From: Girardia tigrina | Lineage: Eukaryota | Direction of reading: 5' to 3' | DNA length: 58,586 bases | Assembly (NCBI GenBank): GCA_001938485.1 | Contig: MQRK01249112.1 | Span: forward strand, 106,604 to 165,189 | Shown here: positions 44,620 through 58,586 of the stretch, piece by piece | Layout: each line of letters opens with the position of its first letter | Numbering within the stretch: position 1 is the stretch's first letter | The notes under the pieces: generated by a model | The model's database searches: none | Seen by the model: only the letters and a program-made list of their open reading frames with translations | Told to the model about the DNA's origin: nothing | Position numbers and translations under genes: made by a program

Positions 44620-45771
44620 CTGGTTCACAATCAGCTAAATTATATGGGCTTACTAAAATACATACAGCTGGTCATCCACTCCACACTGTATTATCGATGA
44701 TTAAGACTGTGCAGTACAATGTCGTAAAGATTATTTATTCCTAATTGAGTCCCTTGATTTTCAATGAATTTGAGATCAGGGATAGCTTTGAATTCAAAGA
44801 TTTCATTTTTGATCAGATACCTAAAGTCGATTCTGAATGTATGATCTCATTTGATGTCTCCAGTTTATTTACGAATGTGCCCATCGATGAAACTATTGAT
44901 TTGTGTGAACAATTATGGGATGATAATTCTGACTGCGTGAATGAAGTAATAAATAAAAATGGAATAAAAAACTGCTTTTTCAACGATGAATGGTACATTC
45001 AGAAAGATAGAGTAACAATGGGTTCCTCAACGTTGACATTAATTTTTATGATGTCCTTTGAGGATAAAATTGATACATACTTGGGGAAAACTTGAGAAAT
45101 ACAGGAGATATGTAGATGACATTTTTCTTGTTTACAAAAACGAATCCCTTATAGAACCATTCTTAAAATCTTTGAATGATCTACATCCTAATATCAAATT
45201 CACTACAGAATCGGAAGTTAATAACACACTTCCTTTTCTTGACATTCTTATCACTAGGATGAATTGGAAATATCGAACTGAATTATACAGAAAAACCACA
45301 GATGCAATTCTCCCGTTATCTTTCGTGATCTTGCGTGAGGAAAAATATAGAGAGGGTATGATAAAGGGCCTAGGTCACAGACTTGGGAGTTTGTTTTCCT
45401 ATTTTGAAACCGCAAATCATGGTTTAAATATTCTTAGAAGACGCTTGAGGGATAAAATTTATACAAACAAAAAGATAGATCACAACAATAATGTTATGTT
45501 GGACTACTTATGTACACAAATATTGGTTAAGAAAGGATTAAATGAAGAAAACATTCAAAAGCACAAGCAAATAATCAAAATACCATATTCTGAAAGATTT
45601 AAAGCATTTAAAAAGAGTATTTGCAAGAATAAAAGTATTGTCAAAGTTGTTTCAATAATTTAAAAAGTTCAAAGCTTCCTCTCGAATAAATCGAAAACGG
45701 TTTGTGAATCGCAAGCTTATCTAATTTATAAATTTGATTGTCACAGATGTAAAAACTCGTACATTGGAGAG
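44620..45771 (+). mobile_element. Penelope-like retroelement fragment (RT plus start of GIY-YIG)
   Basis: SFDVSSLFTNVP, MGS, RYVDDIF, IKFTTESE..LPFLDI..YRK; then LIYKFDCHRCKNSYIGE, truncated immediately afterwards. Confidence 0.9.
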
Positions 45772-45779
45772 TACAAAAC

Positions 45780-46366
45780 GAAATGATGGTTCACTAGGCA
45801 TCTGCGTAAAGATCATCGAATAGAAGCGAGGGAGAATATCAATGAACATCCGACAGAATCATCAGTGCAATCCAACAGAAGAAGCGACAATCCAGACAGA
45901 GACGAAGAACCCACACTTATCCAAACGACCAATTTTCAGCCAGCAACAGTCACCCGACTATTTCAACGGTGGTGGAGCAAACGACTTATCCCGAAGATAC
46001 ACATTTGACTTTTAGGATCGCAGATCCAAATGCGAGGGGAAAGTTCAAATGTCCCTTTCGCGGCTGTACCAAGTCCACCAATACAGCCAAAGGGATGCTG
46101 AATCCATGGTACCACAATTCATGATTGGTCGTTTGCAACAGGGAAGCCTAAGAAATTTCGGAGACTGAAGCACTACATCCCCGTAGGAGGCCTATCGGGG
46201 GGCAGGTAGCACTTTTTAGTTTGGGTGGACCCTCTAAAGAGCCTAGTGGCTCAATACCATTCGAAAGAGATGGGAGGCCCACATTGGAGAGACAAATCGG
46301 CATCTCAAAACCCTGTTTAGTGAGTATTCACAATCAAGTCGATCGAGTAAGGTTCTTGACCATGGG
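45780..46366 (+). mobile_element. Fragment with C2H2 zinc-finger remnants and a GC-rich tail, probably from a non-LTR element
   Basis: WFTRHLRKDH and FKCPFRGCTKSTNTAKGMLN remnants; higher GC than the flanks. Confidence 0.35.
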
Positions 46367-46429
46367 TTACACTGTAAAAATAGAATCTTTAATTTCATAT
46401 ACTACACCTGATTTTTTTTTCTTACTCAT
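46367..46429 (-). pseudogene. Truncated viral ORF start (MSKKKKSGVVYEIKDSIFTV)
   Basis: Same upstream context (TTTAAAAGAAAATGAGT) as the 47047 ORF; it ends at the junction with the unrelated fragment. Confidence 0.4.
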
Positions 46430-46450
46430 TTTCTTTTAAAATATTATAAA

Positions 46451-46552
46451 AATCCAATTAAATCCAAAATCCAAAATCCAATTAAATCCAAAATCCAAAA
46501 TCCAATTAAATCCAAAATCCAAAATCCATTTAAATCCAAATCCAAAATCAAA
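46451..46552. repeat. Tandem repeat, ~24-bp unit (AATCCAATTAAATCCAAAATCCAA) x ~4
   Basis: Direct reading. Confidence 0.9.
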
Positions 46553-47047
46553 TTAAATCTTATTTTCTTTTTGTCTTGTTTTTAAATTAGTTTGTCCTTT
46601 TGCTCTTCCTTTATAATTCCCAGTTCTTTTCGATGATGTTATTGATTCAGTAATTTCACTACATTCATTAACAGATGAAGATTTCTCGTTATCAATTTTC
46701 CAAGAACTAATTTTTTCTTCTAAATTATGTTCTTTAAGATCTTTTAAAATTTCTTCTTTATTTTCATCTTTTTGTAATAATCTCGCATTAAGATTATAAT
46801 TTTCTTCCTTTAGAAGTTTTATAGTATTTTCTAATTTCCTATTTTTTTCCTCTAATTTCAATATTTTATCATTTGAAAAATCAGATGTTTCACTTTTTTC
46901 TTTTAGCATCGTTTGAAATTGAAATGCTAATAATTTATATTCTTCCATCTTTTTTTCGTAAAAAGATATATCATTATTATATCGTGATTTGTAAAAATCA
47001 CAATCTAAACATTTATTTATTAATAAATTTTTTTTTGTCTCACTCAT
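46553..47047 (-). CDS. Viral coiled-coil protein of unknown function, divergent from the ATPase
   Basis: Intact 164-aa ORF with CLDC near the N-terminus, heptad repeats and a basic C-terminus. Confidence 0.6.
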   Translation of the reverse strand: MSETKKNLLINKCLDCDFYKSRYNNDISFYEKKMEEYKLLAFQFQTMLKEKSETSDFSNDKILKLEEKNRKLENTIKLLKEENYNLNARLLQKDENKEEILKDLKEHNLEEKISSWKIDNEKSSSVNECSEITESITSSKRTGNYKGRAKGQTNLKTRQKENKI

Positions 47048-47110
47048 TTTCTTTAAAAATAATTTGAAAATTTTTTCAAAATTTTTTTACCAAAAATTCA
47101 AATTTTAAAA

Positions 47111-48016
47111 ATGAAGGAAAAACTGAATATTTTAACAATGTATGAGTCAAAATTCAAGAATAAACTGTTCCCAAAGAACTTTAGACTGTTAATAGTTGGT
47201 GAATCGGGATGCGGTAAAAATGTTTTATTAACAAAAATGTTACTAGAAGATGGATTTCTCGATTTTAATAATCTAATATTTTATTCCATAACTATTGATC
47301 AACCGGAACTTAAAGTTATTTCAAGTGGATTCCGTTTTGAAGATGGATCATCTTTAACAAAAATGGGAATTCGTGATGTTTTCGAAAAACAGAAAATGTT
47401 ATTAGAAATGATAAAAAAAGAATTAGGAAATAATAATTCTGATTATGTTCCTCCTCCGGAATATCTCGTTTATGCGTATAAAAGATTTATTAATAATAAT
47501 AATAATATTGATAAATCAAAATATTTAATTAGAGATCCTGAAAAAGCGATATCAGTTCTCTTTTCAAGTGATCCTAATCAAATCGTCGCTTGCGACTCTC
47601 TACCGAAAGATGCAAAAAATCTCATTATTTTCGATGATGTTGTAAACTTATCAGATCAGAAAATAATGAAATCGTATTTCACCAGAGGACGTCATAATAA
47701 CTGTAATACGATATACATCTCCCAAACTTTCTACGGATTGGATAAGCATTCTATCCGGAATAATTCCACTGGATTCATTTTTTTCGAATTAGGAAAAAGA
47801 GATAAATCTTATATCTTTTCTGATCTCTTACCCAATAGTGAAAATATCAACGAATATCAGCGGGAAATAATTCATCACTGGCAGCGTAAAAAATATAATT
47901 ATATTTATTTTGATCGCACTGAAAAAAAAATTTATAAAAATTTATTTACAGAAGAAGAAATATCAATCGAAAATCCGAATATGCACTCAGATATTGAAAA
48001 TGGAGAAAGTGATTAA
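47111..48016 (+). CDS. A32/FtsK-like genome-packaging ATPase
   Basis: Walker A LIVGESGCGKN, Walker B LIIFDD, FTRGRH, ISQ and IRNN motifs. Confidence 0.92.
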   Translation: MKEKLNILTMYESKFKNKLFPKNFRLLIVGESGCGKNVLLTKMLLEDGFLDFNNLIFYSITIDQPELKVISSGFRFEDGSSLTKMGIRDVFEKQKMLLEMIKKELGNNNSDYVPPPEYLVYAYKRFINNNNNIDKSKYLIRDPEKAISVLFSSDPNQIVACDSLPKDAKNLIIFDDVVNLSDQKIMKSYFTRGRHNNCNTIYISQTFYGLDKHSIRNNSTGFIFFELGKRDKSYIFSDLLPNSENINEYQREIIHHWQRKKYNYIYFDRTEKKIYKNLFTEEEISIENPNMHSDIENGESD

Positions 48017-48158
48017 TAAAATGATTTCATAAAATAAAAAAAACTTAGATTTTCCTTGAAAAAATAAATAATATTATTCTTTCCTTATCTAACAATATGC
48101 CTTTAATATCATGTCTATAGAAAATAGCTTGATAGTATTGGAAATTTTTATTAAGAAA

Positions 48159-48623
48159 ATGATGATTATTAAAAAAGAAGGTGGAGACATTCAACAATCT
48201 ATGGGAAATTTTGCAAAATATATTCCTGGATTTATGAAAACAAAATACGGTGAACTGCATTTACCAGGTAAAAATTATTGTGGTCCACTAACAAGATTGG
48301 ATATTCGATTAGATGAAAATGATCAACCAATTGGAGAAGATAATAAACCCGTTGATGGATTGGATCAGGCATGCTATAAACATGATATCGCCTACAGATC
48401 TGAAGATTTACGAGATCGGCACTTGGCGGATGTAAATCTTATTCACGATATCAATCAACTTCAAGATCTGACTTTACGACAAAAATTTGAAAGATTTCTC
48501 ATAAAATTTATTATGAAAGGAAAAATCGCATTTGGTGGTGAATTGGAAAATAAAATATATAATAAACAATTAGCTAAAGAACTGCATAAAGCTCATAAAA
48601 AAATAAGGACTTTCTCCGCATAA
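48159..48623 (+). CDS. Parvovirus-VP1u-like phospholipase A2 domain; N-terminal half of a PLA2-integrase fusion
   Basis: ELHLPGKNYCGP (Ca-binding loop), LDQACYKHDIAY (HDxxY), RHLAD. The ORF ends with the integrase N-terminal motif LAKELHK. The start is placed at the AAGAAAATG context. Confidence 0.88.
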   Translation: MMIIKKEGGDIQQSMGNFAKYIPGFMKTKYGELHLPGKNYCGPLTRLDIRLDENDQPIGEDNKPVDGLDQACYKHDIAYRSEDLRDRHLADVNLIHDINQLQDLTLRQKFERFLIKFIMKGKIAFGGELENKIYNKQLAKELHKAHKKIRTFSA

Positions 48624-49480
48624 ATGTTAAATCACTGAATCGGATTTGGTCAGCCGACTTGATAACTGTTGACGCGAAAGAGGATACTGAAAATGGAGTC
48701 GTTGCAACAACAATAACAAAATCAGGACAAACTCGTAAAATTTGGAAATATTATATTTTAACAGTTATAGATATTTATTCACGATATGGTTTTTTTCGTT
48801 TTTTACCAAATAAGAAATCTGAATCAATAATCCAAGCTTTCATTTCAATCTTAACGGAATTGGAAAATACTGAATTACCAATTCCAAAATATTTATGGGT
48901 TGACCAGGGAGCTGAATTCACAAATAAAGAATTTGATAAAAAATTCCTAAAAGCGAATAATATTAAAATGTATTTCGTAAAGGAAAAACCCGTTTTTATT
49001 GAAAGATTTAATAGAACATTAAAATCTGAAATCTATAAACTATTTACTGAGAAAGGTGAGAAAGTTATCACTGAAGCGGAAATGCAAAAAATATTAGAGA
49101 ATTATAATAATAGAATTCATAGCTCTATCCGTGTGTCACCACACGATGTAATGTTTAATAATGCTATTCCACAACCAAAACCACAAAAATTACCCAAGAA
49201 AAAAGTTAAACCAAAATTCAAAGTTGGAGATCGAGTTCGTGTATTCGAAACAAAAATATTTAGTGGTGATAAACCTGAAGGTACTCGTAATAAAAATCAA
49301 GAACGGAAATTACAAACTTTTAAAAAAGGTTATGAACCGAAATGGACGAGAGAAATTTATGTAATTTCTCAAGTTTTGGACCATGAATATCCCGTTACAT
49401 ATAAATTAATAAATCCAGAAAAAGATCGGGAACTATTTGGTCGGTTCTATGAAGCGGATTTACAAAAATCAAATTTTTAA
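48602..49480 (+). CDS. int: Retroviral-like (rve) integrase of Polinton type
   Basis: DDE triad IWSADL / LWVDQGAEF / IERFNRTLK; C-terminal PKFKVGDRVR..FKKGY.PKWTRE..PVTYKL..G.FYE..LQ. No chromodomain. Confidence 0.93.
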   Translation, partial: NKDFLRINVKSLNRIWSADLITVDAKEDTENGVVATTITKSGQTRKIWKYYILTVIDIYSRYGFFRFLPNKKSESIIQAFISILTELENTELPIPKYLWVDQGAEFTNKEFDKKFLKANNIKMYFVKEKPVFIERFNRTLKSEIYKLFTEKGEKVITEAEMQKILENYNNRIHSSIRVSPHDVMFNNAIPQPKPQKLPKKKVKPKFKVGDRVRVFETKIFSGDKPEGTRNKNQERKLQTFKKGYEPKWTREIYVISQVLDHEYPVTYKLINPEKDRELFGRFYEADLQKSNF

Positions 49481-49485
49481 AGAAA

Positions 49486-50901
49486 ATGGAAACAAGTTTT
49501 GAAAAACCAATAAGTCAATTAACCACAGGGATGATTCCCTTGGGAATTTTAGATCTTGATAATAATAAGGAATTTACTCATGTTTTGAAAAAATCTGATA
49601 TAATAAAATTGGCTCCAACATCTGGATCACAAGCATATATGAATAGTAATGGAACTCTGGTTTACCAATTATCGCAAACCACTGATCCGATAGATATTTG
49701 TAACGCAAAATTAGTTTATGATATTGAAATAAAAGACAGTGATTGTGTTTTGGAGACTAATTTCTTTCCAAAATTATTTTCATGCATGTCATTAAAATTA
49801 GGTAACTATGTCGTTGAATCGATAAATAATTCTGGAGTTGTATCGGATATGCTATTATATGTGTCTAAAGACCGAAACTATTTACCATGCGGAGAAATAA
49901 CTGATTTTATTCCAGATCATTATGAAATGATATATGGTGAGAAAATACCTGCGGTATCAACTGCATCTACAAGTAAAAAAATTGATGATGAAGAGGATAC
50001 TCCCGGTTCGAGCGGAGGTACTAACAATACCACAGAAGTTCCAGCGGGTCTACGATACCGAAATATTGGTTATGAAATTCGGAAAGATCAGTTTAAGAAA
50101 AATAGATTCAGAGGTGCTTTCTCACTGAAACATCTCTTTGGATTTTTACAAAATTATAACCGAGTTATTTATAATATTCTTCTAGAATTCACAATGGTGC
50201 GAAAACTTGATGATAAAAGTATTTTTTATTCAGAAAAAGGAACCAAAGGAAAATTAACGATAAATTCCCTGGAACTGCATATGAATCAATTGGAATTGAA
50301 TATCGATTATTATGCTCGANNNNNNNNNNNNNNNNNNNNNNNNNNNNNNNNNNNNNNNNNNNNNNNNNNNNNNNNNNNNNNNNNNNNNNNNNNNNNNNNN
50401 NNCGAGAAAGTTTTCTCCTGGAATGTCGCATATCTAAATTATTTACCAAGATATATTTTCGTGGGAATGAAATTACAAGATTCAAATTACAACTGGAATA
50501 ATTCCCGTTTTCATATGGATTCTAATGAATTCACGATTCAGCTGAAATTGAACAATACTTATTATCCTATTCAACCAATGGTGAATGAAAAAGCGAATCA
50601 GAATTTTTATGATTTATATAATTCATATGTTCAATGTTCTCGCGGATTCCAAGATAAAACCCCAATGCTATCGTTAAAAGATTGGAAAAGTTTATATCCA
50701 ATTATCTGTTTCGATACTAGTGATATCGATAAAACTTTGGATGTCAATAACGTCACCGTTACACTTCTCATTCGAAAATCAGAAACTTTTCAACCGAAAA
50801 TGTATTGTGTAATTTTGGAAGAAGCAAAAATAAAAATGTCTCTACGAGGATCACAAATCACAATAATCGAACCATTCAAAGGAACCGTTGATAAGAAATA
50901 A
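49486..50901 (+). CDS. Double jelly-roll major capsid protein
   Basis: 471 aa, beta-rich, with Polinton-MCP-like motifs (LF..MSLKLGN..VE, LKHLFGF, PRYIFVG, YPIICFD). It sits in the virion module. Confidence 0.8.
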   Translation: METSFEKPISQLTTGMIPLGILDLDNNKEFTHVLKKSDIIKLAPTSGSQAYMNSNGTLVYQLSQTTDPIDICNAKLVYDIEIKDSDCVLETNFFPKLFSCMSLKLGNYVVESINNSGVVSDMLLYVSKDRNYLPCGEITDFIPDHYEMIYGEKIPAVSTASTSKKIDDEEDTPGSSGGTNNTTEVPAGLRYRNIGYEIRKDQFKKNRFRGAFSLKHLFGFLQNYNRVIYNILLEFTMVRKLDDKSIFYSEKGTKGKLTINSLELHMNQLELNIDYYARXXXXXXXXXXXXXXXXXXXXXXXXXXXXEKVFSWNVAYLNYLPRYIFVGMKLQDSNYNWNNSRFHMDSNEFTIQLKLNNTYYPIQPMVNEKANQNFYDLYNSYVQCSRGFQDKTPMLSLKDWKSLYPIICFDTSDIDKTLDVNNVTVTLLIRKSETFQPKMYCVILEEAKIKMSLRGSQITIIEPFKGTVDKK

Positions 50902-50970
50902 AGATACGAGCAGAATTGGGCATAATTTGTTTTTTTTATGAAAAAAAGAAAATATGAGATCCCTGAAGGT

Positions 50971-51007
50971 TAATAATTTTTATTCTCAGCGAGAACAAAA
51001 ATTATTA
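50971..51007 (+). promoter_or_regulatory. Pre-ATG hairpin 1
   Basis: TAATAATTTTT-A-TTCTC-agc-GAGAA-C-AAAAATTATTA; ATG at 51013. Confidence 0.6.
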
Positions 51008-51012
51008 TAAAA

Positions 51013-51702
51013 ATGGCTTCGAAAACAGATGCTTTAAAAATACGAAAATTAATAGATACACAAACTCCTGGTTTGATTCGAGTGAATGGAAAGGAAGTGT
51101 ATTTAAATCGGGAAATGTTGAAAAAGATTAAAGATTTAGAAAAGAATGGAGGAGAGATTGGTGGATATTATCACAGCGGAGGAATTTTACCACTTATTCC
51201 CGCTATAATCGCTGGTTTAACTACTCTTTTCACAGTAGGAGGAGCAGCCGCTGGAGTAGCCACTGGAGTTGCAAAAACTGTTGCAAATGCTCGCGAAGCA
51301 CAAAAGAATAAGGTTGAAACCGAGAAAGCAGAAATTGAAAAACAAATAAGACAAAAGGAACTTGATAGAATGAATGAACCAACAGGATCAGGATTACGGA
51401 AAGGAAAAAAAGGAGGAATTTTACCTTTTATAGCAGAAATAGAAAAAAATTTGCCAGGTTTATGGAAAATAGCTAAATCAGCACTAGATAGTTTAGGAGA
51501 AGGGTTGTACTTGGATGATTATACTGGTAAAGGAATTCAAAAATTTTTTCGTGAACAAATAAATCAATCGGATAAAGATCCAAAATCGAAAAAGGCTCTA
51601 TTGAATAAAAATAAAAAATTGGGAGGGAAATTGAAATGCCATTTCTTGGGAAAGGGATTATACTTGGAACCTTGGGATCCGAATAATCAGAATCAGATTT
51701 GA
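51013..51702 (+). CDS. pX-like core/membrane-active precursor protein
   Basis: GGILPLIPAIIAGL...GGAAAGVA resembles adenovirus pX (GGILPLLIPLIAAAIGA). A second GGILPF and several GxG(L/I) motifs follow. Confidence 0.65.
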   Translation: MASKTDALKIRKLIDTQTPGLIRVNGKEVYLNREMLKKIKDLEKNGGEIGGYYHSGGILPLIPAIIAGLTTLFTVGGAAAGVATGVAKTVANAREAQKNKVETEKAEIEKQIRQKELDRMNEPTGSGLRKGKKGGILPFIAEIEKNLPGLWKIAKSALDSLGEGLYLDDYTGKGIQKFFREQINQSDKDPKSKKALLNKNKKLGGKLKCHFLGKGLYLEPWDPNNQNQI

Positions 51703-51709
51703 ATAAAAA

Positions 51710-52045
51710 ATGAATAGAAATAATAATAATAATGATTTATATAATTTTATGCGAGCATTACCAGAACAATTACGAAAAGAGAAAGCAGCTCGACGGAAAT
51801 ACAATGAAAAAATTAAAAAAAGATTATACGTTCGCAGAAATGAGGGTATGCAATATCACGACCGACAACAGAAACCCATGAAATCGGAAGAGGAGATCAA
51901 AGCTCGACTTGAGGAGAAAAGATTAAAATTAAAAATATTAGAGCAAGAAATCCTAGCAAAATTATTTGCAAAGCAATTAAATCTTGAAAAACCGAAACAG
52001 AAAGAGGGAGAAGGAATTAGAAAAACAAAATCCATAAGAAAATGA
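51710..52045 (+). CDS. Small basic viral protein (possible core/DNA-binding)
   Basis: K/R-rich helical ORF ending EGEGIRK; its stop overlaps the next ATG (ATGA). Confidence 0.55.
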   Translation: MNRNNNNNDLYNFMRALPEQLRKEKAARRKYNEKIKKRLYVRRNEGMQYHDRQQKPMKSEEEIKARLEEKRLKLKILEQEILAKLFAKQLNLEKPKQKEGEGIRKTKSIRK

Positions 52046-53292
52046 CTATACAATTAAATGAAGGAGAAAATCGAGTATTAAAAGGTTTTGTTGCTACACA
52101 ACAACAACCTTTGAATGAACATCAAAAATATTTTGATTATTTACGAAAAAGTTTGGCACAATCCTCACTAGCAATCCATGAATACAATCGTCAAGAATTG
52201 GAATATAAAAGCGGTATAACCGATTTTCAAACATCAATGTCGAAAATGTTCCAACCTTTAATGACTGGATTACAAGGTCCCATCACAGACAGAATCTCAG
52301 CTCTAAAAACCAAAGTTGTTAAATTGGAAAATGATTTGAAACGATTTCTTGAAGTTGATATAAAGAATTATGATAATGTGAAATCCAAATCTTTTTTTGT
52401 TCAATATCAACAGGAATATTTACTCATTCAACAGGAATTAGCTCCGATAATGCAGGAAATGATTGAGAAATATCCACAAGATAAGGAATTTATCACCAGT
52501 CATCATGAGATAACAAAAAAATTATTAGAAGAGTTGGCACAGAAATTGGGAACGAAATTCGAACCTCAACAATTATCGCAAGCTGCTCCCTTTTTGGAAA
52601 TATTCTTTATTACAAGATATTATGAAAATTTCGGATCTTCTCCGATGTTGCGTCCAACGTTTGGAAGAAATGCCGAGGGAAAACAATTTATGACATTCAA
52701 TAAATATATATTTATTCTCATGAACGAGGGTGGAAAATATTATTTCGTGAGAAATGATAATCGGGTTCGGGTAGAGCTTGATGAGATTTTTAATAATATC
52801 CTAATTGGTAATTATGAAATTATTTTCAATAAAAGTTATACTCTGGAAGAAAAACATACATCATTTGACAAGTATTTATCATTTCTATTAAATAATGGAA
52901 TAAACGCTCGAGAAAGAGATTATTATTATACTAAACTTTGTTTTGATGCTTTTAATAAAGCTGAAGGATTAGTAGGAGAATTTGCGCAACCACTAGGATA
53001 TCCGAAAAAGGAAAGAACATCATCATTACCACGGTTACGATCACAAAAAGGAAAACCAAAAGAAAAATATTTCGATGCTCCTCAATCACCACCACCTGAA
53101 GGACAAGGAATACCTAAAGATCCGATTTCAATGTTTTCGTATTTGTATAAATATATCGCTGCAAAGAAGGCTGGTCATGATGGTTTGGATGATAATATTT
53201 TGAATATTATGAAGAAATTAAGACGAAAAAAATTATTAACAAAAGAAAAACAAGAGGAATTATTGAAAAAAATATTTGATAAAAATGGGTGA
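52042..53292 (+). CDS. Conserved Polinton-type protein of unknown function
   Basis: The C-terminal GQGIPKDP..MF..L...AAKKAGHDG...I..I...L resembles a GxG..DP..L..A..AG[NH] motif I recall from animal Polinton ORFs. Confidence 0.55.
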   Translation: MTIQLNEGENRVLKGFVATQQQPLNEHQKYFDYLRKSLAQSSLAIHEYNRQELEYKSGITDFQTSMSKMFQPLMTGLQGPITDRISALKTKVVKLENDLKRFLEVDIKNYDNVKSKSFFVQYQQEYLLIQQELAPIMQEMIEKYPQDKEFITSHHEITKKLLEELAQKLGTKFEPQQLSQAAPFLEIFFITRYYENFGSSPMLRPTFGRNAEGKQFMTFNKYIFILMNEGGKYYFVRNDNRVRVELDEIFNNILIGNYEIIFNKSYTLEEKHTSFDKYLSFLLNNGINARERDYYYTKLCFDAFNKAEGLVGEFAQPLGYPKKERTSSLPRLRSQKGKPKEKYFDAPQSPPPEGQGIPKDPISMFSYLYKYIAAKKAGHDGLDDNILNIMKKLRRKKLLTKEKQEELLKKIFDKNG

Positions 53293-53311
53293 CTCGCTTC
53301 GCTCGCCACGT

Positions 53312-53340
53312 TTTTTTATAATATTTCATATTATAAAAAA
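53312..53340 (+). promoter_or_regulatory. Pre-start hairpin 2
   Basis: Perfect 13-bp stem TTTTTTATAATAT-ttc-ATATTATAAAAAA directly before the penton frame. Confidence 0.6.
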
Positions 53341-54341
53341 TTGGTGAGAGTAGTGGATTTTCTACAACGTTTACAATTTCTGCTGCGAAATCGGAAATTA
53401 AAGTGCAACTACCTGTTCAGTTGAATCTGGATCCAAAACATAAATACGAAATCGGATTAGTTTGGTTCTCNNNNNNNNNNNNNNNNNNNNNNNNNNNNNN
53501 NNNNNNNNNNNNNNNNNNNNGGATTAGTTTGGTTCTCGACTTATAACTTGGTTGCGAATATCACTGAAACGAATAATTCGTTTTTATTAATCTATAAGGG
53601 TAAAGAATTTCCAGCTGATAAAAAATTTAAAAATGTGAATAAGATTGATGATCCTGAATTTGTTTATCTAGATTTAAAACTGAAACCAGGATCAAAAGGA
53701 TTCAAGGAAATCAATAAAGAAATCGGAGATCTAACGCAACAAATTATTCAAGTGAAAACGGATGAGAAAACTGCAAAATCAACAATTGTTATACCCGATA
53801 AATATGCACTAGAATTCAATCAGCAGTCATTCCTGCATTCGATGCATGGATTTGANNNNNNNNNNNNNNNNNNNNNNNNNNNNNNNNNNNNNNNNNNNNN
53901 NNNNNACTAGAATTCAATCAGCAGTCATTCCTGCATTCGATGCATGGATTTGATTCGAATAATAATAATTCATATTGGCTTGAAGTTAGTATAAAAGGTC
54001 CAGTGAAAGATTATGAATCGAAATTTACTTTTCAGATAACGGATATAAATATCTGTAATATTGATTGCAATATCGCAAATGGTGGATACGTTTCGTTTGA
54101 TGATGAAAATAAAGAAAATGAGAATGTGAAGAACTCTAATATTATTTATTCGTTTCCAGCGTTTACAGTTCCAATCGGCTATAAAATCAGTGAGCGACCA
54201 TCCTTCGTAACTTATTATCCGGTATACATTTATCAAATAAATGATTTCACTGTGAGAATTATTGATAATAAGGGGCGTTTAATAGATTTCCAAAATGAGA
54301 AAATAAATATGTGTTTACGCTTGAGACAAAGTGTATTATGA
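53340..54341 (+). CDS. Minor capsid protein (penton, single jelly roll); split by two artefactual gaps; starts at ATT
   Basis: SEIKVQLPVQLNL..KYEIGLVWFSTYN..NITETNN; later IDCNI..G, IYSFP..VPIGYKISERP..YYPV, VRIID.KGRLIDF. Sequences flanking both N-runs are duplicated. Confidence 0.85.
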
Positions 54342-54388
54342 AAATGATAGCTCAGCGAAGCCTCGTGATTTTGAATAAAATCAATTAA

Positions 54389-54426
54389 TGAGTAGAATTT
54401 TTTTCTACGAAAACAAATTCTACTCA
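54389..54426 (+). promoter_or_regulatory. Pre-ATG hairpin 3
   Basis: TGAGTAGAATTT-TTTTC-tac-GAAAA-C-AAATTCTACTCA; ATG at 54430. Confidence 0.65.
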
Positions 54427-54429
54427 AAA

Positions 54430-54927
54430 ATGATAGAATTTTACAATCTCGAAGACATAATGCAAATGTTCGGAGTTGACACTTCAACGAATATTCAACT
54501 TGAAGATTGGGCAAGAAAATTAAAAATTGAAATACAAGTTTTGATGGCTGATGAAGTGGATAAAAAAATAAATAATAAAAAACTTAGTATAATAAATTAC
54601 CAGGATTCAGATGAGAAAGGGAGTCATTGGGTGGGATTTTATAATGGAAAAGTGAAAAATGAGAAAGTATCTTATGAGAATGAAAACGCGACGAAGGAGC
54701 CGGTTTCATTCTATTTTGATCCGTATGGAATAGAACCTTTACCAGATTTTCCAAAATGTATATATAATTCAGTACAAGTACAACCCTTCGGAACACGATT
54801 ATGTGGACAATTGAGTTTATATTTTTTATTTAAAATGAATCAGTGTGAATGCAATAATAAGGCGCAAAAATTTGATGATATAATTGAGGAAATGTTAGAT
54901 TGTTTATGGCCAGAAACACTTCTATGA
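54430..54927 (+). CDS. Adenain-like (C5) maturation cysteine protease
   Basis: IINY..S..GSHWV (His), FYFDPYG (Asp), QVQ....LCG (Gln/Cys). The start is placed at the ATG after the hairpin. Confidence 0.92.
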   Translation: MIEFYNLEDIMQMFGVDTSTNIQLEDWARKLKIEIQVLMADEVDKKINNKKLSIINYQDSDEKGSHWVGFYNGKVKNEKVSYENENATKEPVSFYFDPYGIEPLPDFPKCIYNSVQVQPFGTRLCGQLSLYFLFKMNQCECNNKAQKFDDIIEEMLDCLWPETLL

Positions 54928-54950
54928 TTTAATTTTATAAAATGGGTAAC

Positions 54951-54990
54951 TGAGATGATTTTTTTTTCTTTTAAAAACAAAATCATCTCA
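54951..54990 (+). promoter_or_regulatory. Pre-ATG hairpin 4
   Basis: TGAGATGATTTT-TTTTT-ctttt-AAAAA-C-AAAATCATCTCA; ATG at 54995. Confidence 0.65.
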
Positions 54991-54994
54991 AAAA

Positions 54995-55603
54995 ATGAAT
55001 TATATTCCTGTGAATAAATTAGGAATGGTAATGCAGATTGGTGGAATGAAAGAGAAAATAAATGAAAATATTGAAGCAAATAATCGGAAATTGGATAAGA
55101 TATTTGTGAATACAGAAAAATTAGAGGAGAATAATAAAAAGTTGGATAAGATATTTGTGAATGAGCAGGGAAATGATGATGTTGAATCAATGCGAGTAAA
55201 AGAATCATTAATTGTTAAAGATAAAGATATTTATCAGGAAATAGATTCAATAAATAAATTTAAAAAATTTGTCATCAATCCATTGAATAAAAATGTTAGT
55301 GAGAATACGAAAAAGATTGATAATATTAATGAGAATATGAAAAAAATTGAAGAAAAGATTAATCAGAATATTCTTGAAAATGTTAAAAAAATTAATAAGG
55401 ATATTGAAAAGATTAATCAGAATATTCTTGAAAAAATTAATAAGGATATTGAAAAGATTAATCAGAATATTCTTGAAAATGTTAAAAATATTGTTGAAAA
55501 AATTAAAATGATAAATAAAGATATTCTGAATGTGGAAAAGAAAATAAAATTACATGAAAACTGTTTGAAGAAATGTATAGAAGAAATTAAGAAACCTAAA
55601 TAA
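54995..55603 (+). CDS. Coiled-coil repeat protein, putative fibre/spike
   Basis: N-terminal VNKLG; repeats of KINQNILE(NVK)KINKDIE and KLDKIFVN. Confidence 0.5.
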   Translation: MNYIPVNKLGMVMQIGGMKEKINENIEANNRKLDKIFVNTEKLEENNKKLDKIFVNEQGNDDVESMRVKESLIVKDKDIYQEIDSINKFKKFVINPLNKNVSENTKKIDNINENMKKIEEKINQNILENVKKINKDIEKINQNILEKINKDIEKINQNILENVKNIVEKIKMINKDILNVEKKIKLHENCLKKCIEEIKKPK

Positions 55604-55605
55604 AA

Positions 55606-56151
55606 ATGTATGTGAATAAATTGGGAGAATCTTGGTTGGACGCGGAATACGTCAATGAGAGTGGAGATCAGATTCCCGATTTGGAAGTTGGGAATTTGGT
55701 TGTTGATAATCTTGTAGTGAGGAGTCTTCATCAAAATCCGATAGGAGATTTAAAATTGAAAATTAATTTTAATTATTCAGAAGAAGTTAAAAAACAGGAG
55801 AAAGATTTAAAAGTATTAGATGTATCTTTGAAAATAATAGGAAAATATTCTCAACGATATAAATTCGACTTTTCCAACTTTGAAGGGGAAATAAATGAAG
55901 TTGATGAAGAGGAATTAAAAAAACATAATATTGAAGATATATTAAAAAAATTAACTTTTGAATATATCCATAGAATAATTATTGAAGTAAAAGATTACAA
56001 AAAAATAAAAGGAGGAGGAGGAATTATAGTATCCAAAGATGTTATTGTTAAATACGAATATTATAACTGGGTGGAAATAAGGAATTTTGAAAATTATTTT
56101 TTTAATCTTCATATTCCACCGTTGTTTTTAAGAAAAAAAAATATTTTATGA
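55606..56151 (+). CDS. Viral protein with N-terminal VNKLG, putative fibre-related
   Basis: Starts 2 nt after the previous stop; MYVNKLG; LEVGNLVVDNLVV beta-repeat-like stretch. Confidence 0.5.
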   Translation: MYVNKLGESWLDAEYVNESGDQIPDLEVGNLVVDNLVVRSLHQNPIGDLKLKINFNYSEEVKKQEKDLKVLDVSLKIIGKYSQRYKFDFSNFEGEINEVDEEELKKHNIEDILKKLTFEYIHRIIIEVKDYKKIKGGGGIIVSKDVIVKYEYYNWVEIRNFENYFFNLHIPPLFLRKKNIL

Positions 56152-56830
56152 CTACTGAAAATGAGATAACTTTTTTTAAACATTTAAAAGCATTAGAAGA
56201 AAAATTAAAAGAAAAATTAGATTTAGTTTTTTTTATAATATGACTTTTTATTCATTTGAAAAATATGTAAAAGAATTAAAAGAACGGGAAGTTAGGATAA
56301 AATTGGAAAAAGTAGGAGAAAAAAGAATTCAAATATTGAATTCATCTGATTCTGAATCGATGTATATTAATTTTTATTTGAAAAATAAAGTGGAAAGACT
56401 GGAAGCTCGGATACAGACATTGGAACAACATTTGAAAAAATATACACATGAAATAATTAATCACCAGGAACAGACAAATGAAATTATTTTTCAAAAATTT
56501 ATTAATAAATTCATAGTGAATTCATTGTTAAGTGTTGAAGAATTGAAAATTATTAAATACTCATTTGCTGAAATATTTGAAATGCATATATATAAATTTA
56601 TTGTGAATCTATATGATGAAAATTATAAAATCGTAAAAGTAATCCACTTGACAAATATCAGTTTATTCGGGAATTGGGAAATTAAAAATAAAAAATATTA
56701 TGTTATATTCAATAATACGATTAATAAGTATTATGTTTTTCAATATTTCATATTTTATTATTATTTATTTTTCAAATGGAAATATGTTGTAAATACTTTC
56801 GAAGTAAAAAAGGAATTGATAAGAAAATGA
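56148..56830 (+). CDS. Viral protein of unknown function; probable homopolymer frameshift at the T8 run 56227-56234
   Basis: An ATGA-coupled start (MTTENEITFFKHLKALEEKLKEKL) connects to the 56240-56830 ORF through the T-run. Confidence 0.45.
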
Positions 56831-56857
56831 GTGACTCGCTTCGCTCGCCACGTTTTC

Positions 56858-56895
56858 TGAGATGATTTGTTTCTATAAAAACAAAAATCATCTCA
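56858..56895 (+). promoter_or_regulatory. Pre-ATG hairpin 5
   Basis: TGAGATGATTT...AAAAC-AA-AAATCATCTCA; ATG at 56899. Confidence 0.65.
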
Positions 56896-56898
56896 AAA

Positions 56899-57543
56899 AT
56901 GGGCGAAGAAATGAAAACTTCTGTGGAAGAAAATGTTTCGTATCCTGATTTGTACATGGAAGAATTTTTACAAAAGTATAATAAACCGGTAACTCCTGAA
57001 ACTTATAAAAAAGAATTGAATACTTTGCATGTTCAGTATTTTAAGAAAGATTTGGAATATTTAAGTGAGCATATTGCTCATTATCAGAAATTACATAAAA
57101 GATGGAAACGAATTGCTATAACAGTAAAATATTGTAATGGGATATTAACTTTCGTTGGATCTGTTGGAGCNNNNNNNNNNNNNNNNNNNNNNNNNNNNNN
57201 NNNNNNNNNNNNNNNNNNNNNNNNNNNNNNNNNNNNNNNNNNNNNNNNNNNNNNNNNNNNNNNNNNNNNNNNTAATTTAATAACTTTGAAAAAATTGAAA
57301 AAATATCGAAATTATTTACGAACATTAGAAAAGACTAATGATGAATTATTTATGTTTCATAAGAAAGCATTGAGTGATAATTTGATAACTGATGAAGAGT
57401 TAAAAATGAGTAAAGATATTTTGGAGAAGTGTAAAATAAATATTGGAAAATTAAATGATGGACAAAAGAGAGAGGATAAAACGAATACTTTAATTACAAA
57501 TGATCATTTGGAAAAATTGAGAATATTATTAGAAAAAATATAA
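56899..57543 (+). CDS. Putative membrane protein of a Polinton accessory family
   Basis: A hydrophobic segment starts at IAITVKYCNGILTFVGSVG (rest in the gap), followed by KKLKKY...KALSDNLITDEEL. Confidence 0.55.
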   Translation: MGEEMKTSVEENVSYPDLYMEEFLQKYNKPVTPETYKKELNTLHVQYFKKDLEYLSEHIAHYQKLHKRWKRIAITVKYCNGILTFVGSVGXXXXXXXXXXXXXXXXXXXXXXXXXXXXXXXXXXXNLITLKKLKKYRNYLRTLEKTNDELFMFHKKALSDNLITDEELKMSKDILEKCKINIGKLNDGQKREDKTNTLITNDHLEKLRILLEKI

Positions 57544-57567
57544 AAATAAAATTTTAAATAAAAAAAA

Positions 57568-57909
57568 ATGGATAAAGAAATATTTATTTGTGATATATGT
57601 AATTTTAAAGGATTAATACAAAATAAACAGAGACATTTGAATAGTAAAAAACATCATGTAAAAACGAATTTTGAAAAAGTTTATAAAGCTGTTAAAAATA
57701 ATTCCAATTCAGAAAATAATAATAGTAATTCCGATCCTGAATATGAATATAATCTAAATATTGGGTTTAATCCAAATAATAAATATAATCCAAATAATGA
57801 ATATAATCCAAATAATGGGTTTAATCCAAATAATGAATATAGTTATTCTGATCCTGAATATATACCGAATACAGAAAATAGTTCCTTTTGTGATGATGAA
57901 AATGAATAA
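57568..57909 (+). CDS. C2H2 zinc-finger protein with NPNN(E/K/G)(Y/F) repeats
   Basis: CDIC..........HLNSKKH; 18-bp tandem repeats at about 57766-57840. Confidence 0.65.
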   Translation: MDKEIFICDICNFKGLIQNKQRHLNSKKHHVKTNFEKVYKAVKNNSNSENNNSNSDPEYEYNLNIGFNPNNKYNPNNEYNPNNGFNPNNEYSYSDPEYIPNTENSSFCDDENE

Positions 57910-57992
57910 AAATTTAAATGGTCATAAATAATCTAATATTTTTAATTTGTTAGTCTAATATAATTTTTATTTTCAGCAATAAAATAACCATT

Positions 57993-58016
57993 AGCTATTC
58001 TTCGGAATAGCTTTTT
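57993..58016 (+). terminator. Hairpin AGCTATTC-TTCG-GAATAGCT followed by a T-run
   Basis: Perfect 8-bp stem with a C(UUCG)G loop, intergenic, followed by TTTT. Function is inferred only. Confidence 0.4.
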
Positions 58017-58056
58017 GGCACCCGAATTGGGAAATGCTATAATATTTTTAAAGAAA

Positions 58057-58586
58057 ATGTCCATAAAATTTTTACAAAAGATGAGTTTAAGAAGAAGATC
58101 AAAAAAATTTGATATTTGGGATGAAGAGAGTTTAAATTTAGAGTGGTTATTCTTATTACCTGAGATAAATAATATTAATGAGAATGTTGATTTGAGTATT
58201 GATGTTGAAGATGATGAAGAAGAAATTGAAACAGATACCGAATCCAATAATATTTGGCGGAATATTATTGGAAGAGATATCGATTTCAATTTTGGTGATA
58301 GTGATGATGAAAATTTTATTATAAAAATAAAAAAGAAAAAAAAATTAGACGAAGAGGAAATGAGTACAGATAATGATTGTGAATCTTTAGACGGAAATAA
58401 TATTGTGAATGAAAATCCATTGTATTGTTCATATTGTAGAAAACATTTTAAAAATAAATCTGGAATTGGTTCACATAATAGAAGTATACAACATATAAGA
58501 AATGTGAATCTTCAAGGAATTGAAGGAGAAGGAATTGGAGAAGATGAAAACATGGAAATAGTTGAAAATGATGAATGCTCTTATCT
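58057..58586 (+). CDS. Acidic, C2H2 zinc-finger-containing ORF open at the window end (possibly the N-terminus of pPolB)
   Basis: Not in the supplied ORF track because it has no stop. MSIKFLQKMSLRRRSKK...CSYCRKHFKNKSGIGSHNRSIQH...QGIEGEGIGE. Confidence 0.6.
   Translation, partial: MSIKFLQKMSLRRRSKKFDIWDEESLNLEWLFLLPEINNINENVDLSIDVEDDEEEIETDTESNNIWRNIIGRDIDFNFGDSDDENFIIKIKKKKKLDEEEMSTDNDCESLDGNNIVNENPLYCSYCRKHFKNKSGIGSHNRSIQHIRNVNLQGIEGEGIGEDENMEIVENDECSY

What the first reader, a model, noticed from the sequence alone, without database searches (positions are those of the whole stretch)
50971..56901. Conserved hairpin immediately before the first start codon of each viral gene block
Seen: five intergenic stem-loops (50971, 53312, 54389, 54951, 56858) with 11-13 bp outer stems, each ending 0-5 nt before a start codon. 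Four have an unpaired C or AAC in the 3' arm followed by AAAATG. Stem sequences differ (TAATAATTTT, TGAGTAGAATTT, TGAGATGATTTT) yet pairing is retained, which suggests selection on structure. Known: mimivirus and virophage transcripts end in AT-rich hairpins, and phage N4 uses hairpin promoters. Inferred: this is a hairpin-based promoter, 3'-processing or translation-initiation signal, which I do not know to be described for animal Polintons.
Basis: partly seen in the sequence, partly recalled or inferred. Interest (0 to 1): 0.85.

Follow-up and report, generated by a model that had tools for sequence, protein, structure and literature searches.

The report
Hairpins punctuating a Polinton's gene blocks
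A virus-like element sitting in transposon-rich, animal-like DNA carries non-random AT-rich hairpins at nearly every boundary between same-direction gene blocks, four of them built from a start-codon-proximal motif plus its inverted copy. This gives a concrete, still untested handle on how such elements mark where one transcript ends and the next begins.

Summary
The five hairpins exist at the stated coordinates. Their perfect outer stems are 11, 13, 12, 12 and 11 bp, the folds are -9 to -15.5 kcal/mol, and z is -4.1 to -6.7. The element has 7 such perfect hairpins against 0.32 expected, and 5 of them lie in the 6.3% that is non-coding.

Corrections:
- Only four hairpins are followed by an ATG, 3-5 nt later. 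The hairpin at 53312 is a different, pure A/T type with no ATG after it.
- Two of the three "different" stems are identical (54951 = 56858).
- All stem pairs are Watson-Crick, and the minus strand folds as well. So RNA-level selection is not shown.
- Two ORF-internal hairpins are equally unusual.

The "unpaired C / AAC" belongs to a linear motif 18-19 nt before the ATG of five genes. One of those genes (52042) has no hairpin, so the 3' arm is a start-proximal signal and the 5' arm is its added complement. Stem-loops occupy 6 of 7 co-directional junctions of at least 40 nt, and the divergent junction has none.

Best reading (0.4): hairpins mark the 3' end of the upstream unit and overlap the start signal of the next. 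This resembles the giant-virus "hairpin rule" and yeast linear-plasmid terminators. No Rfam family or paper describes it.

The parts
50971..51007 (+). Hairpin H1: 11-bp outer stem, A/C mismatch, 5-bp inner stem, 3-nt loop. The ATG of ORF 51013 follows 5 nt later. The stem's first triplet is a stop codon.
   Evidence: (-11.0 kcal/mol, z -5.1)
53312..53340 (+). Hairpin H2: pure A/T 13-bp stem with a 3-nt loop. It is a different type: no C, and no ATG after it.
   Evidence: (-9.0 kcal/mol, z -4.1)
54389..54426 (+). Hairpin H3: 12-bp outer stem, bulged C, 5-bp inner stem, 3-nt loop. ATG 54430 follows 3 nt later.
   Evidence: (-15.5 kcal/mol, z -6.7)
54951..54990 (+). Hairpin H4: 12-bp outer stem. 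ATG 54995 follows 4 nt later. Its stem is the same as that of H5.
   Evidence: (-14.5 kcal/mol, z -4.9)
56858..56895 (+). Hairpin H5: 11-bp outer stem. ATG 56899 follows 3 nt later.
   Evidence: (-15.1 kcal/mol, z -5.3)
52024..52044 (+). The same start-proximal motif (AAC, 3-5 A, T, lying 18 nt before the ATG) in front of ORF 52042, inside the upstream ORF and with no hairpin partner.
53282..53314 (+). GC-rich box, copy 1 (33 nt, 32/33 identical to copy 2). It lies between the stop of ORF 52042-53292 and H2. It forms a small 6-7 bp stem-loop, then a T run.
56824..56856 (+). GC-rich box, copy 2, lying between the stop of ORF 56240-56830 and H5.
57993..58012 (+). Sixth block-boundary stem-loop: 8-bp stem and 4-nt loop, followed by a T run. 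It is 45 nt before ATG 58057, so not adjacent to the start.
   Evidence: -12.7 kcal/mol, z -3.1
50938..50973 (+). Short ORF of 11 codons whose stop codon is the first triplet of the H1 stem.
54338..54388 (+). Short ORF of 16 codons ending directly against the first base of H3. Its ATG overlaps the upstream stop codon.
54942..54953 (+). Short ORF of 3 codons whose stop codon is the first triplet of the H4 stem.
56827..56865 (+). Short ORF of 12 codons spanning GC box 2 and ending 5 nt inside the H5 stem.
49474..49488 (+). Second start-motif class: 15 nt ending in the ATG of the capsid gene. The same 15 nt occur at 58045-58059 (+) and 47045-47059 (-), and with 1 mismatch at 46427-46441 (-).
47111..48016 (+). 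A32-type packaging ATPase gene.
   Evidence: (PF04665, 1.1e-08)
48111..48623 (+). Gene with a phospholipase A2-like domain.
   Evidence: PF08398, 1.8e-10
48659..49480 (+). rve integrase-like ORF with no ATG at its head (one defect: missing start or 5' truncation).
   Evidence: PF00665, 7.3e-09
49486..50901 (+). Double jelly-roll major capsid protein gene. It holds an 83-N gap, and the same frame is open on both sides of it.
   Evidence: PF21738 on both pieces
51013..53292 (+). Gene block after H1: ORFs 51013-51702, 51710-52045 and 52042-53292, with junctions of 7 nt and -4 nt. Functions unassigned.
53337..54341 (+). ORF after H2, in three pieces around two assembly gaps. It has no ATG at its head (one defect) and its function is unassigned. 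A penton role is only a guess from its position.
54430..54927 (+). ORF after H3 (165 aa). A cysteine protease is my own reading and is not confirmed by Pfam or by the PDB sequence search.
54995..56830 (+). Gene block after H4: ORFs 54995-55603, 55606-56151, 56148-56243 and 56240-56830, with junctions of 2, -4 and -4 nt.
56899..57909 (+). Gene block after H5: ORFs 56899-57543 (holds a 102-N gap) and 57568-57909.
46553..47047 (-). Divergent minus-strand ORF (164 aa, coiled-coil-like). The 63-nt divergent junction 47048-47110 holds no significant hairpin.

Best explanation
The hairpins mark the boundaries between transcription units in a very compact, AT-rich virus-like genome.

Each of the four ATG-adjacent hairpins has two parts:
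- The 3' arm is a linear start-proximal signal of the downstream gene: an A-rich stretch with one C about 16-17 nt before the ATG, then a run of A, then the ATG.
- The 5' arm is an inverted copy of that signal. It begins with stop codons and carries a T run.

Inferred mechanism: a polymerase arriving from the upstream block transcribes both arms. The RNA then folds and marks the 3' end of the upstream transcript by termination or processing, which also keeps read-through out of the next unit. Transcripts of the downstream block start within or just after the 3' arm, so they carry an unstructured A-rich leader and no hairpin. H2, the two GC boxes and the stem-loop at 57993 would be further 3'-end marks of other shapes.

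Shown here: the anatomy, the positions and the statistics. Inferred: that the structure acts as RNA, that it ends transcripts, and where transcripts start.
For: 1. Stem-loops occupy 6 of the 7 co-directional junctions of at least 40 nt. There is none at the divergent junction 47048-47110, where no upstream transcript has to end. There is none at the tightly coupled or overlapping junctions inside blocks either.
2. The AAC/A-run/T pattern lies exactly 18-19 nt before five ATGs, out of 13 occurrences in the element. One of the five is ORF 52042, which has no hairpin. The looser pattern lies at -28 to -12 of 7 of 15 starts (P about 8e-7, post hoc). So the 3' arm carries a strand-specific signal that also works without a partner.
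3. A second motif of 15 identical nt abuts three other start codons, and 11 of 16 starts are preceded by AAA against 33 of 252 other ATGs. Signals in this element therefore sit directly against start codons, which leaves little room for a transcript start upstream of the hairpin.
4. AATAAA occurs 56 times on the coding strand, so it cannot mark 3' ends on its own. PMC4402537 gives this same argument for why AT-rich giant viruses use a structural signal.
5. There is precedent. Hairpin-forming palindromes end Mimiviridae transcripts and flank virophage and transpoviron genes. RNA stem-loops with a median of -7.5 kcal/mol end the transcripts of yeast linear virus-like elements.
Against: - No transcript data exist for this locus.
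- Hairpin position is fixed relative to the downstream ATG (3-5 nt) but variable relative to the upstream stop (19-69 nt). That pattern is what a pure start signal would show. My model explains it only through the double duty of the 3' arm.
- The AT hairpins are followed by A runs, not the U tract of intrinsic terminators.
- No RNA polymerase, RNase III or poly(A) polymerase gene lies in the visible 12 kb. Nuclear Pol II is not known to use such hairpins for polyadenylated mRNAs.
- The ATPase-to-PLA2 junction (94 nt) has no hairpin.
- Everything rests on one element, and conservation in other copies or relatives was not tested.
Confidence: 0.4

Rival explanations
1. DNA-level promoter element. 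The palindrome itself is recognised in double-stranded or extruded form by the transcription machinery or by a dimeric factor. It would switch on the first gene of each block, as the hairpin promoters of phage N4 do.
For: - The hairpin covers about -45 to -4 from the ATG, which is where a compact promoter must sit.
- All stem pairs are Watson-Crick with no G.U, and both strands fold equally well. That is expected for a DNA palindrome.
- H4 and H5 share one stem sequence inside unrelated flanks, as co-regulated promoters would.
- Three hairpins have 3-nt loops.
Against: - ORF 52042 carries the same 3'-arm motif without any palindrome, and the ATPase gene, which is first in the array, has no significant hairpin. 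So the palindrome is not needed for a start.
- Stem sequences differ between H1, H2 and H3-H5, so no single factor site exists.
- The centre of the palindrome is self-complementary too, which a dimeric binding site does not need.
- No polymerase gene of the N4 kind was seen.
Confidence: 0.2
2. Translation-level signal on polycistronic mRNA. A short upstream ORF ends at the foot of the hairpin. The ribosome then bypasses or melts the stem and re-initiates at the ATG 3-5 nt beyond it, which is the logic of ribosome shunting in plant pararetroviruses. This would let the first gene of a block be read from a long transcript.
For: - In H1, H3, H4 and H5 an ATG-headed ORF of 3-16 codons stops at -3, 0, 0 and +5 nt from the first stem base. 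The joint chance with shuffled spacers is 0.0024, tested post hoc.
- Three of these short ORFs, and the one before H2, start in the same context as real genes.
- ATGA-type stop/start overlaps inside blocks suggest that coupled translation is used elsewhere in the element.
Against: - The test was designed after seeing the pattern.
- Stems of -11 to -15 kcal/mol are weak obstacles for scanning ribosomes (established knowledge, not tested here).
- For H2 the short ORF runs through the hairpin.
- The start motifs that abut the ATGs argue for separate transcripts.
- After a long upstream ORF, eukaryotic ribosomes are not expected to stay competent for re-initiation.
Confidence: 0.15
3. No function of its own. 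The palindromes are by-products of replication (template switching that copies a local A-rich motif in inverse orientation) or small palindromic insertions, tolerated only where no protein is encoded.
For: - Perfect Watson-Crick arms with no wobble pairs fit a recent mutational origin.
- Intergenic location is also where such events are tolerated.
- Two further perfect hairpins lie inside ORFs (47622, 58243).
- The element looks young, with long open ORFs, so little time has passed for decay.
Against: - Four independent sites share one architecture: stop triplet at the stem foot, T run, one unpaired C, and 3-5 nt to the ATG.
- Six of 7 eligible junctions are occupied.
- No target-site duplications flank the hairpins.
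- No copy occurs in the 46 kb of host DNA in the window.
Confidence: 0.1

Closest known systems
"Hairpin rule" 3'-end signals of Mimiviridae and Pithovirus, also found flanking virophage and transpoviron genes (PMC4402537, PMC7031253)
   Same: AT-rich genome. Hairpin-forming palindromes lie in short intergenic regions after the stop codon. The structure rather than one sequence is shared. AATAAA is too frequent to be informative. The small dependent elements carry the same marks as their helper virus.
   Different: - Here the hairpins are locked to the next start codon (3-5 nt) and contain its start-proximal motif.
- Three of them share sequence.
- They follow gene blocks, not every gene.
- No RNase III-like or poly(A) polymerase gene and no helper virus is in evidence.
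- The element is integrated in animal-like DNA.
- Transcript ends are unknown.
Transcription signals of yeast cytoplasmic linear virus-like elements pGKL1/2 (PMC6211774)
   Same: Very AT-rich, compact relatives of protein-primed elements. Short promoter elements lie 20-40 nt before the ATG, with an A-run initiator next to the start. Weak RNA stem-loops (median -7.5 kcal/mol) act as terminators.
   Different: - The yeast terminators are followed by a U tract, whereas the five AT hairpins here are followed by A runs. Only the GC boxes and the 57993 stem-loop have T runs.
- The yeast elements encode their own polymerase, capping enzyme and helicase, and none was seen in the 12 kb here.
- I saw the yeast upstream conserved sequence (ATNTGA) in the hairpins only with mismatches, and I ran no search for it.
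Ribosome shunt leaders of plant pararetroviruses (from my own knowledge; not fetched or compared)
   Same: A short ORF ends at the foot of a stem, with the main start just beyond the stem.
   Different: The stems here are short and weak. The context would be an internal site of a polycistronic RNA rather than a capped leader. None of this was tested.
Hairpin promoters of phage N4
   Same: Small DNA hairpins with 3-nt loops lie upstream of starts.
   Different: The stems here are much longer. There is no virion-type single-subunit polymerase gene and no shared promoter sequence. A start motif works here without the hairpin.

Membership tests
Polinton / Maverick (adintovirus-like) element | Double jelly-roll capsid gene, A32/FtsK-type packaging ATPase and rve integrase in one compact array | tested here: met
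   Pfam hits PF21738, PF04665 and PF00665 on adjacent ORFs. A PLA2-like domain (PF08398) is also present, a trait that PMC8502044 reports for Mayetiola-class adintoviruses.
Polinton / Maverick (adintovirus-like) element | Protein-primed family B DNA polymerase, terminal inverted repeats and target-site duplication | not testable with these tools
   The element runs off the window at 58586. No polymerase was found in the visible 12 kb. The left side abuts other repeats and a 24-nt tandem array at 46449-46559.
Polinton / Maverick (adintovirus-like) element | Adenovirus-type cysteine protease | tested here: inconclusive
   ORF 54430-54927 gave no Pfam protease hit and no PDB sequence hit. No structure search was run.
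Giant-virus "hairpin rule" 3'-end signal | Hairpin-forming AT-rich palindrome in the intergenic region downstream of the stop codon | tested here: met
   All five lie 19-69 nt after a stop, with z of -4.1 to -6.7.
Giant-virus "hairpin rule" 3'-end signal | Polyadenylation sites of transcripts coincide with the hairpin | not testable with these tools
   No transcript data are available here.
Giant-virus "hairpin rule" 3'-end signal | Motif not conserved at sequence level, and one per gene | tested here: not met
   H4 and H5 share their stem, and H3 differs from them at only 3 pairs. Hairpins follow blocks of 1-4 genes, not each gene.
Giant-virus "hairpin rule" 3'-end signal | Cognate RNase III-like nuclease and viral poly(A) polymerase, own or from a helper | tested here: inconclusive
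   None among the ORFs scanned. The element is incomplete, and a helper virus cannot be seen from this window.
Intrinsic stem-loop terminators (bacterial type, yeast VLE type) | Stem-loop immediately followed by a U tract | tested here: not met
   The five AT hairpins are followed by A runs or, for H2, by a mixed TTGGTGAG. The simple terminator scan flags only GC box 1 and two unrelated sites, with counts equal to shuffles. The 57993 stem-loop and the GC boxes do have T runs.
Any Rfam RNA family (includes the histone 3' stem-loop and known viral elements) | Covariance-model match | tested here: not met
   There were 0 matches at E of 1 or less in 46000-58586 on both strands.
Phage N4-type hairpin promoter | Short hairpin with conserved promoter letters, read by a dedicated single-subunit polymerase | tested here: inconclusive
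   No such polymerase gene was found in the visible part. The stems are 16-18 bp rather than short. ORF 52042 carries the same motif without a hairpin. No N4 sequence was compared.
Shunt-type translation leader | Short ORF ending at the foot of the stem, with a start codon just beyond it | tested here: met
   Found in four of five hairpins, with joint chance 0.0024, tested post hoc.
Shunt-type translation leader | The short ORF is the first ORF of a capped mRNA and is translated | not testable with these tools
   This needs transcript and ribosome data.
Miniature palindromic mobile insertion (MITE-like) | Target-site duplication and further copies elsewhere | tested here: not met
   The flanks show no duplication. 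No copy lies outside the element in 46 kb of host DNA.

The most novel reading that the evidence does not exclude
The element is not expressed by the host's nuclear Pol II. It would instead be read by a cytoplasmic, giant-virus-type transcription system: start signals abutting the ATG, A-rich leaders and structural 3'-end marks. That would make it a virophage-like dependant of a large DNA virus, integrated in an animal genome, with the hairpins being that helper's transcript-end signal.
Probability: 0.12. Interest if true: 0.85.

Novelty: new variant of a known kind. Interest (0 to 1): 0.55.

Why it matters
In the papers I could search, nothing describes how Polintons, Mavericks or adintoviruses organise transcription. 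This locus offers a precise, checkable map. It gives two classes of start-codon-proximal motifs and a stem-loop at nearly every boundary between same-direction gene blocks.

If transcript ends fall on these marks, annotators would have a rule for finding transcription units in AT-rich virus-like elements, where AATAAA is uninformative. The kind of machinery implied, nuclear or giant-virus-like, would also say whether such elements in animals are autonomous or depend on a helper virus.

Tried and rejected
- Rfam at a permissive threshold found nothing.
- The bacterial-type promoter and terminator scan gave counts equal to shuffles.
- The Mimivirus early motif AAAATTGA, as printed in the papers, occurs 6 times in the element but only once within 100 nt of a start. 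I rejected it.
- A search for other copies or fragments of the element in the remaining 46 kb found none by blastn or tblastx.
- Pattern searches for the stem and for the motif before the ATG found no extra members outside the element.
- A MITE reading fails because there is no target-site duplication.
- Splice-acceptor reading: only H1's loop and the region before 57977 look like acceptors, and the other hairpins have no AG between the T run and the ATG. I did not pursue it.
- microRNA precursor reading: the stems of 16-18 bp are too short (my own knowledge).
I counted pairs by script instead.
- PDB sequence searches for the ORFs after H2, after H3 and at 52042 found nothing significant.
- The RT-like ORFs at 44745-45663 were not confirmed by Pfam.
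- The ATPase search found only unnamed metagenome proteins of at most 54% identity over most of the query, plus one at 74% over 56% of it. It gave no host information.
- Literature searches for hairpins or promoters in Polintons, Mavericks and adintoviruses found nothing pertinent.

Full report
CONTEXT. The window is about 29% G+C and has eleven runs of N. Its first 46 kb hold few long ORFs and several transposon remnants. These include two Mos1-type mariner copies (HTH_48, 6e-15), a Tc3-type transposase HTH, a gag-like zinc knuckle and RT-like ORFs that Pfam did not confirm. This is transposon-rich eukaryotic DNA, plausibly from an animal. The species was not identified, and nothing suggests human sequence.

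From about 46.4 kb to the end of the window lies a compact array of intron-less ORFs, nearly all on the + strand:
- an A32-type ATPase (47111-48016);
- a PLA2-like protein (48111-48623);
- an rve integrase-like ORF (48659-49480);
- a double jelly-roll capsid protein (49486-50901);
- about eleven further ORFs without assignable function.

This is a Polinton/Maverick-like element, cut by the window end. PMC8502044 reports the PLA2-like gene as characteristic of Mayetiola-class adintoviruses. The closest ATPase relatives in the protein collection are unnamed metagenome proteins of at most 54% identity over most of the query, plus one at 74% over 56% of it.

State of the genes as they stand:
- Two ORFs, the integrase-like one and the ORF after hairpin 2, have no ATG at their head (one defect each).
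- A minus-strand start motif at the left edge is followed by only 20 codons (one truncation).
- Four N runs fall inside ORFs.
- I saw no internal stop or frameshift in the other ORFs.

GAPS (tested first, as asked). The gaps at 53471-53520 and 53856-53905 both lie inside the ORF that follows hairpin 2, and neither touches a hairpin. Each gap is flanked by an exact direct duplicate, of 17 nt and 48 nt. Unmerged overlapping contig ends would give this pattern. Each of the three ORF pieces has exactly one open frame. The offsets between the duplicates (67 and 98 nt) carry each frame onto the next. So the pieces are compatible with one continuous reading frame. I did not build the joined sequence, fill any gap or look up the letters elsewhere.

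THE OBSERVATION. With inner pairs, four of them form 16-18 bp hairpins interrupted by one mismatch or bulge. The energies are -9.0 to -15.5 kcal/mol and the z-scores are -4.1 to -6.7. DNA parameters give the same picture.

The element holds seven perfect hairpins of at least 11 bp, against 0.32 expected from dinucleotide shuffles, and no shuffle reached five. Five of the seven lie in the 6.3% of the element that is non-coding (P = 1.8e-5). Junctions without a hairpin fold no better than shuffles. The host part of the window has seven such hairpins in 46.5 kb, a quarter of the density.

CORRECTIONS.
1. Hairpin 53312 is another kind of object. It is pure A/T with a 3-nt loop and no unpaired C, and no ATG follows it. 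The frame of the next ORF is open from inside its 3' arm.
2. The stems at 54951 and 56858 are the same in their 11 outermost pairs. The stem at 54389 differs from them at three pairs, all changed on both sides, and the stem at 50971 differs at five to six. These are paralogous sites of one element. There is not one G.U pair, and the minus strand folds as well or better. So the data cannot tell an RNA structure from a DNA palindrome. A palindrome born as an inverted copy of a local motif is complementary from the outset.
3. By energy alone the five are not unique. ORF-internal windows 55660-55709 (which uses G.U pairs and folds on the + strand only) and 52734-52783 have z of about -5. Windows at or below -14 kcal/mol are nevertheless about 15 times denser in non-coding sequence than in coding sequence.

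NEW ANATOMY. The "unpaired C / AAC" is part of a linear motif. The pattern "AAC, three to five A, T" occurs 13 times on the coding strand. Five of those occurrences lie exactly 18-19 nt before a start codon: the four hairpin-adjacent genes and ORF 52042. The motif of ORF 52042 lies inside the upstream ORF and has no complementary partner. A looser form lies at -28 to -12 of 7 of 15 starts (P about 8e-7, post hoc).

A second motif of 15 identical letters ending in the ATG heads three other genes: the capsid gene, the ORF at 58057 and the minus-strand ORF at 47047. It occurs with one mismatch at a fourth start, at the left edge. Eleven of 16 starts are preceded by AAA, against 33 of 252 other ATGs. 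Start signals in this element therefore sit directly against the start codons. The 3' arm of each ATG-adjacent hairpin is such a signal, and the 5' arm is its added inverted copy.

WHERE THE COMPLEMENT IS ADDED. The element has seven co-directional junctions of at least 40 nt. Six hold a stem-loop:
- H1 to H5;
- an 8-bp stem with a 4-nt loop and a T run at 57993-58012 (z -3.1).

The exception is the ATPase-to-PLA2 junction. The divergent junction before the ATPase gene has the A-rich motif but no significant hairpin. Inside blocks the ORFs are 2-7 nt apart or overlap by 4 nt, including a 31-codon ORF (56148-56243) that overlaps both of its neighbours.

FURTHER FEATURES AT THE JUNCTIONS.
- A 33-nt GC-rich box, 32/33 identical, precedes H2 and H5. 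It forms a small stem-loop followed by a T run.
- An 8-letter CG-containing word occurs only twice in the element: in the loop of H1 and 30 nt before H3.
- The 5' arms of H1, H3, H4 and H5 begin with a stop triplet. In each, a short ORF of 3-16 codons ends within -3 to +5 nt of the stem foot. The joint chance is 0.0024, tested after the fact.
- Three of the junctions share a 12-letter start-like word ahead of the hairpin.

MECHANISM. I commit, at 0.4, to punctuation between transcription units. The RNA hairpin would be made only by polymerases arriving from upstream. It would mark the 3' end of that unit and protect the next start. The next unit would begin within or after the 3' arm. Three things fit this reading:
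- the occupancy rule: co-directional block ends have stem-loops, while the divergent junction and in-block starts do not;
- the hairpin-less copy of the motif at ORF 52042;
- the uselessness of AATAAA here, at 56 copies on the coding strand.

Three things do not fit:
- A runs rather than U tracts follow the stems;
- no processing or polymerase gene is visible;
- the spacing is fixed to the downstream ATG and not to the upstream stop.

The rivals are a DNA-level promoter palindrome (0.2), a short-ORF/hairpin/ATG device for re-initiation or shunting (0.15), and functionless by-products (0.1). Only transcript-end data and comparison with other copies can decide among them.

COMPARISON WITH WHAT IS KNOWN. 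The nearest systems are two. One is the hairpin-forming palindromes that end transcripts of Mimiviridae and Pithovirus and also flank virophage and transpoviron genes (PMC4402537, PMC7031253). The other is the signals of yeast cytoplasmic linear virus-like elements (PMC6211774). Those have an upstream element 20-40 nt before the ATG, an A-run initiator and weak stem-loop terminators.

The present case works like these in outline. It fails or cannot meet several defining features: one hairpin per gene with no shared sequence, a U tract after the stem, and cognate enzymes. It also adds a feature that neither system is described with, a hairpin fused to the next gene's start signal and locked 3-5 nt from the ATG. 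I found no Rfam family and no paper describing this for Polintons, Mavericks or adintoviruses. I rate it a new variant of a known kind, seen so far in one element.

VERDICT. The feature is real, non-random and apparently undescribed. Its anatomy is now clearer than in the finding, but its function remains inferred. Interest is 0.55.

Noticed in passing
53282-53314 and 56824-56856: A 33-nt GC-rich box, 32/33 identical, sits in an otherwise 21-30% G+C element. Each copy lies between a block's last stop codon and an AT hairpin, and each can form a 6-7 bp stem-loop followed by a T run. Each is also the body of a short ORF with nearly the same first ten residues.
   Followed up: partly
47045-47059 (-), 49474-49488 (+), 58045-58059 (+), 46427-46441 (-): Fifteen identical letters ending in the ATG head three genes, among them the capsid gene. 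A fourth copy has one mismatch. This is a second class of start-codon-proximal motif, distinct from the one in the hairpins' 3' arms.
   Followed up: partly
50938-50973, 54338-54388, 54942-54953, 56827-56865, 53285-53347: Short ORFs of 3-20 codons lie in the junctions. Four of them stop at the foot of a hairpin. The fifth runs through hairpin 2.
   Followed up: partly
57993-58012: An 8-bp stem with a 4-nt loop, followed by a T run, lies in the 147-nt junction before ORF 58057. About 20 nt upstream (to 57976) is a pyrimidine run ending in CAG that looks like a splice acceptor.
   Followed up: partly
55660-55709 and 52734-52783: ORF-internal RNA hairpins as unusual as the intergenic ones (z about -5). 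The first uses G.U pairs, so it folds on the + strand only. It lies 55 nt into ORF 55606-56151.
   Followed up: partly
53454-53537 and 53808-53953: Both 50-N gaps are flanked by exact direct duplicates (17 and 48 nt), as unmerged overlapping contig ends would be. The ORF frames on the two sides of each gap correspond.
   Followed up: yes
56148-56243: A 31-codon ORF overlaps the stop codon of the preceding ORF and the start codon of the next by 4 nt each. ORFs 51710 and 52042 overlap in the same way. This is a gene packing unusual for nuclear eukaryotic genes.
   Followed up: partly
48111-48623: The ORF holds a phospholipase A2-like domain (PF08398, 1.8e-10). Papers report this domain for parvovirus VP1, Mayetiola-class adintoviruses and polinton-like viruses found with entomopoxviruses.
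   Followed up: partly
46449-46559; 55292-55506; 57743-57841: Three tandem arrays: a 24-nt unit repeated 4.7 times at the left edge of the element, 45-nt repeats inside the coiled-coil ORF 54995-55603, and 18-nt repeats inside ORF 57568-57909.
   Followed up: no
30467-32017 and 38214-39135: Two Mos1-type mariner copies on the minus strand, both with long runs of N in the transposase body. A Tc3-type HTH lies at 23236-23787 and a gag-like zinc knuckle at 18754-19812. The neighbourhood is transposon-rich. The N runs were left as they are.
   Followed up: partly
50985-50992 and 54351-54358: The same 8-letter CG-containing word occurs only twice in the element: in the apical loop of hairpin 1 and 30 nt upstream of hairpin 3. 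Part of it is the reverse complement of the core of the GC box.
   Followed up: no
57568-57909 and 58057-58586: Two ORFs with weak C2H2-type zinc-finger matches, below the Pfam cut-offs. The second runs off the end of the window.
   Followed up: no
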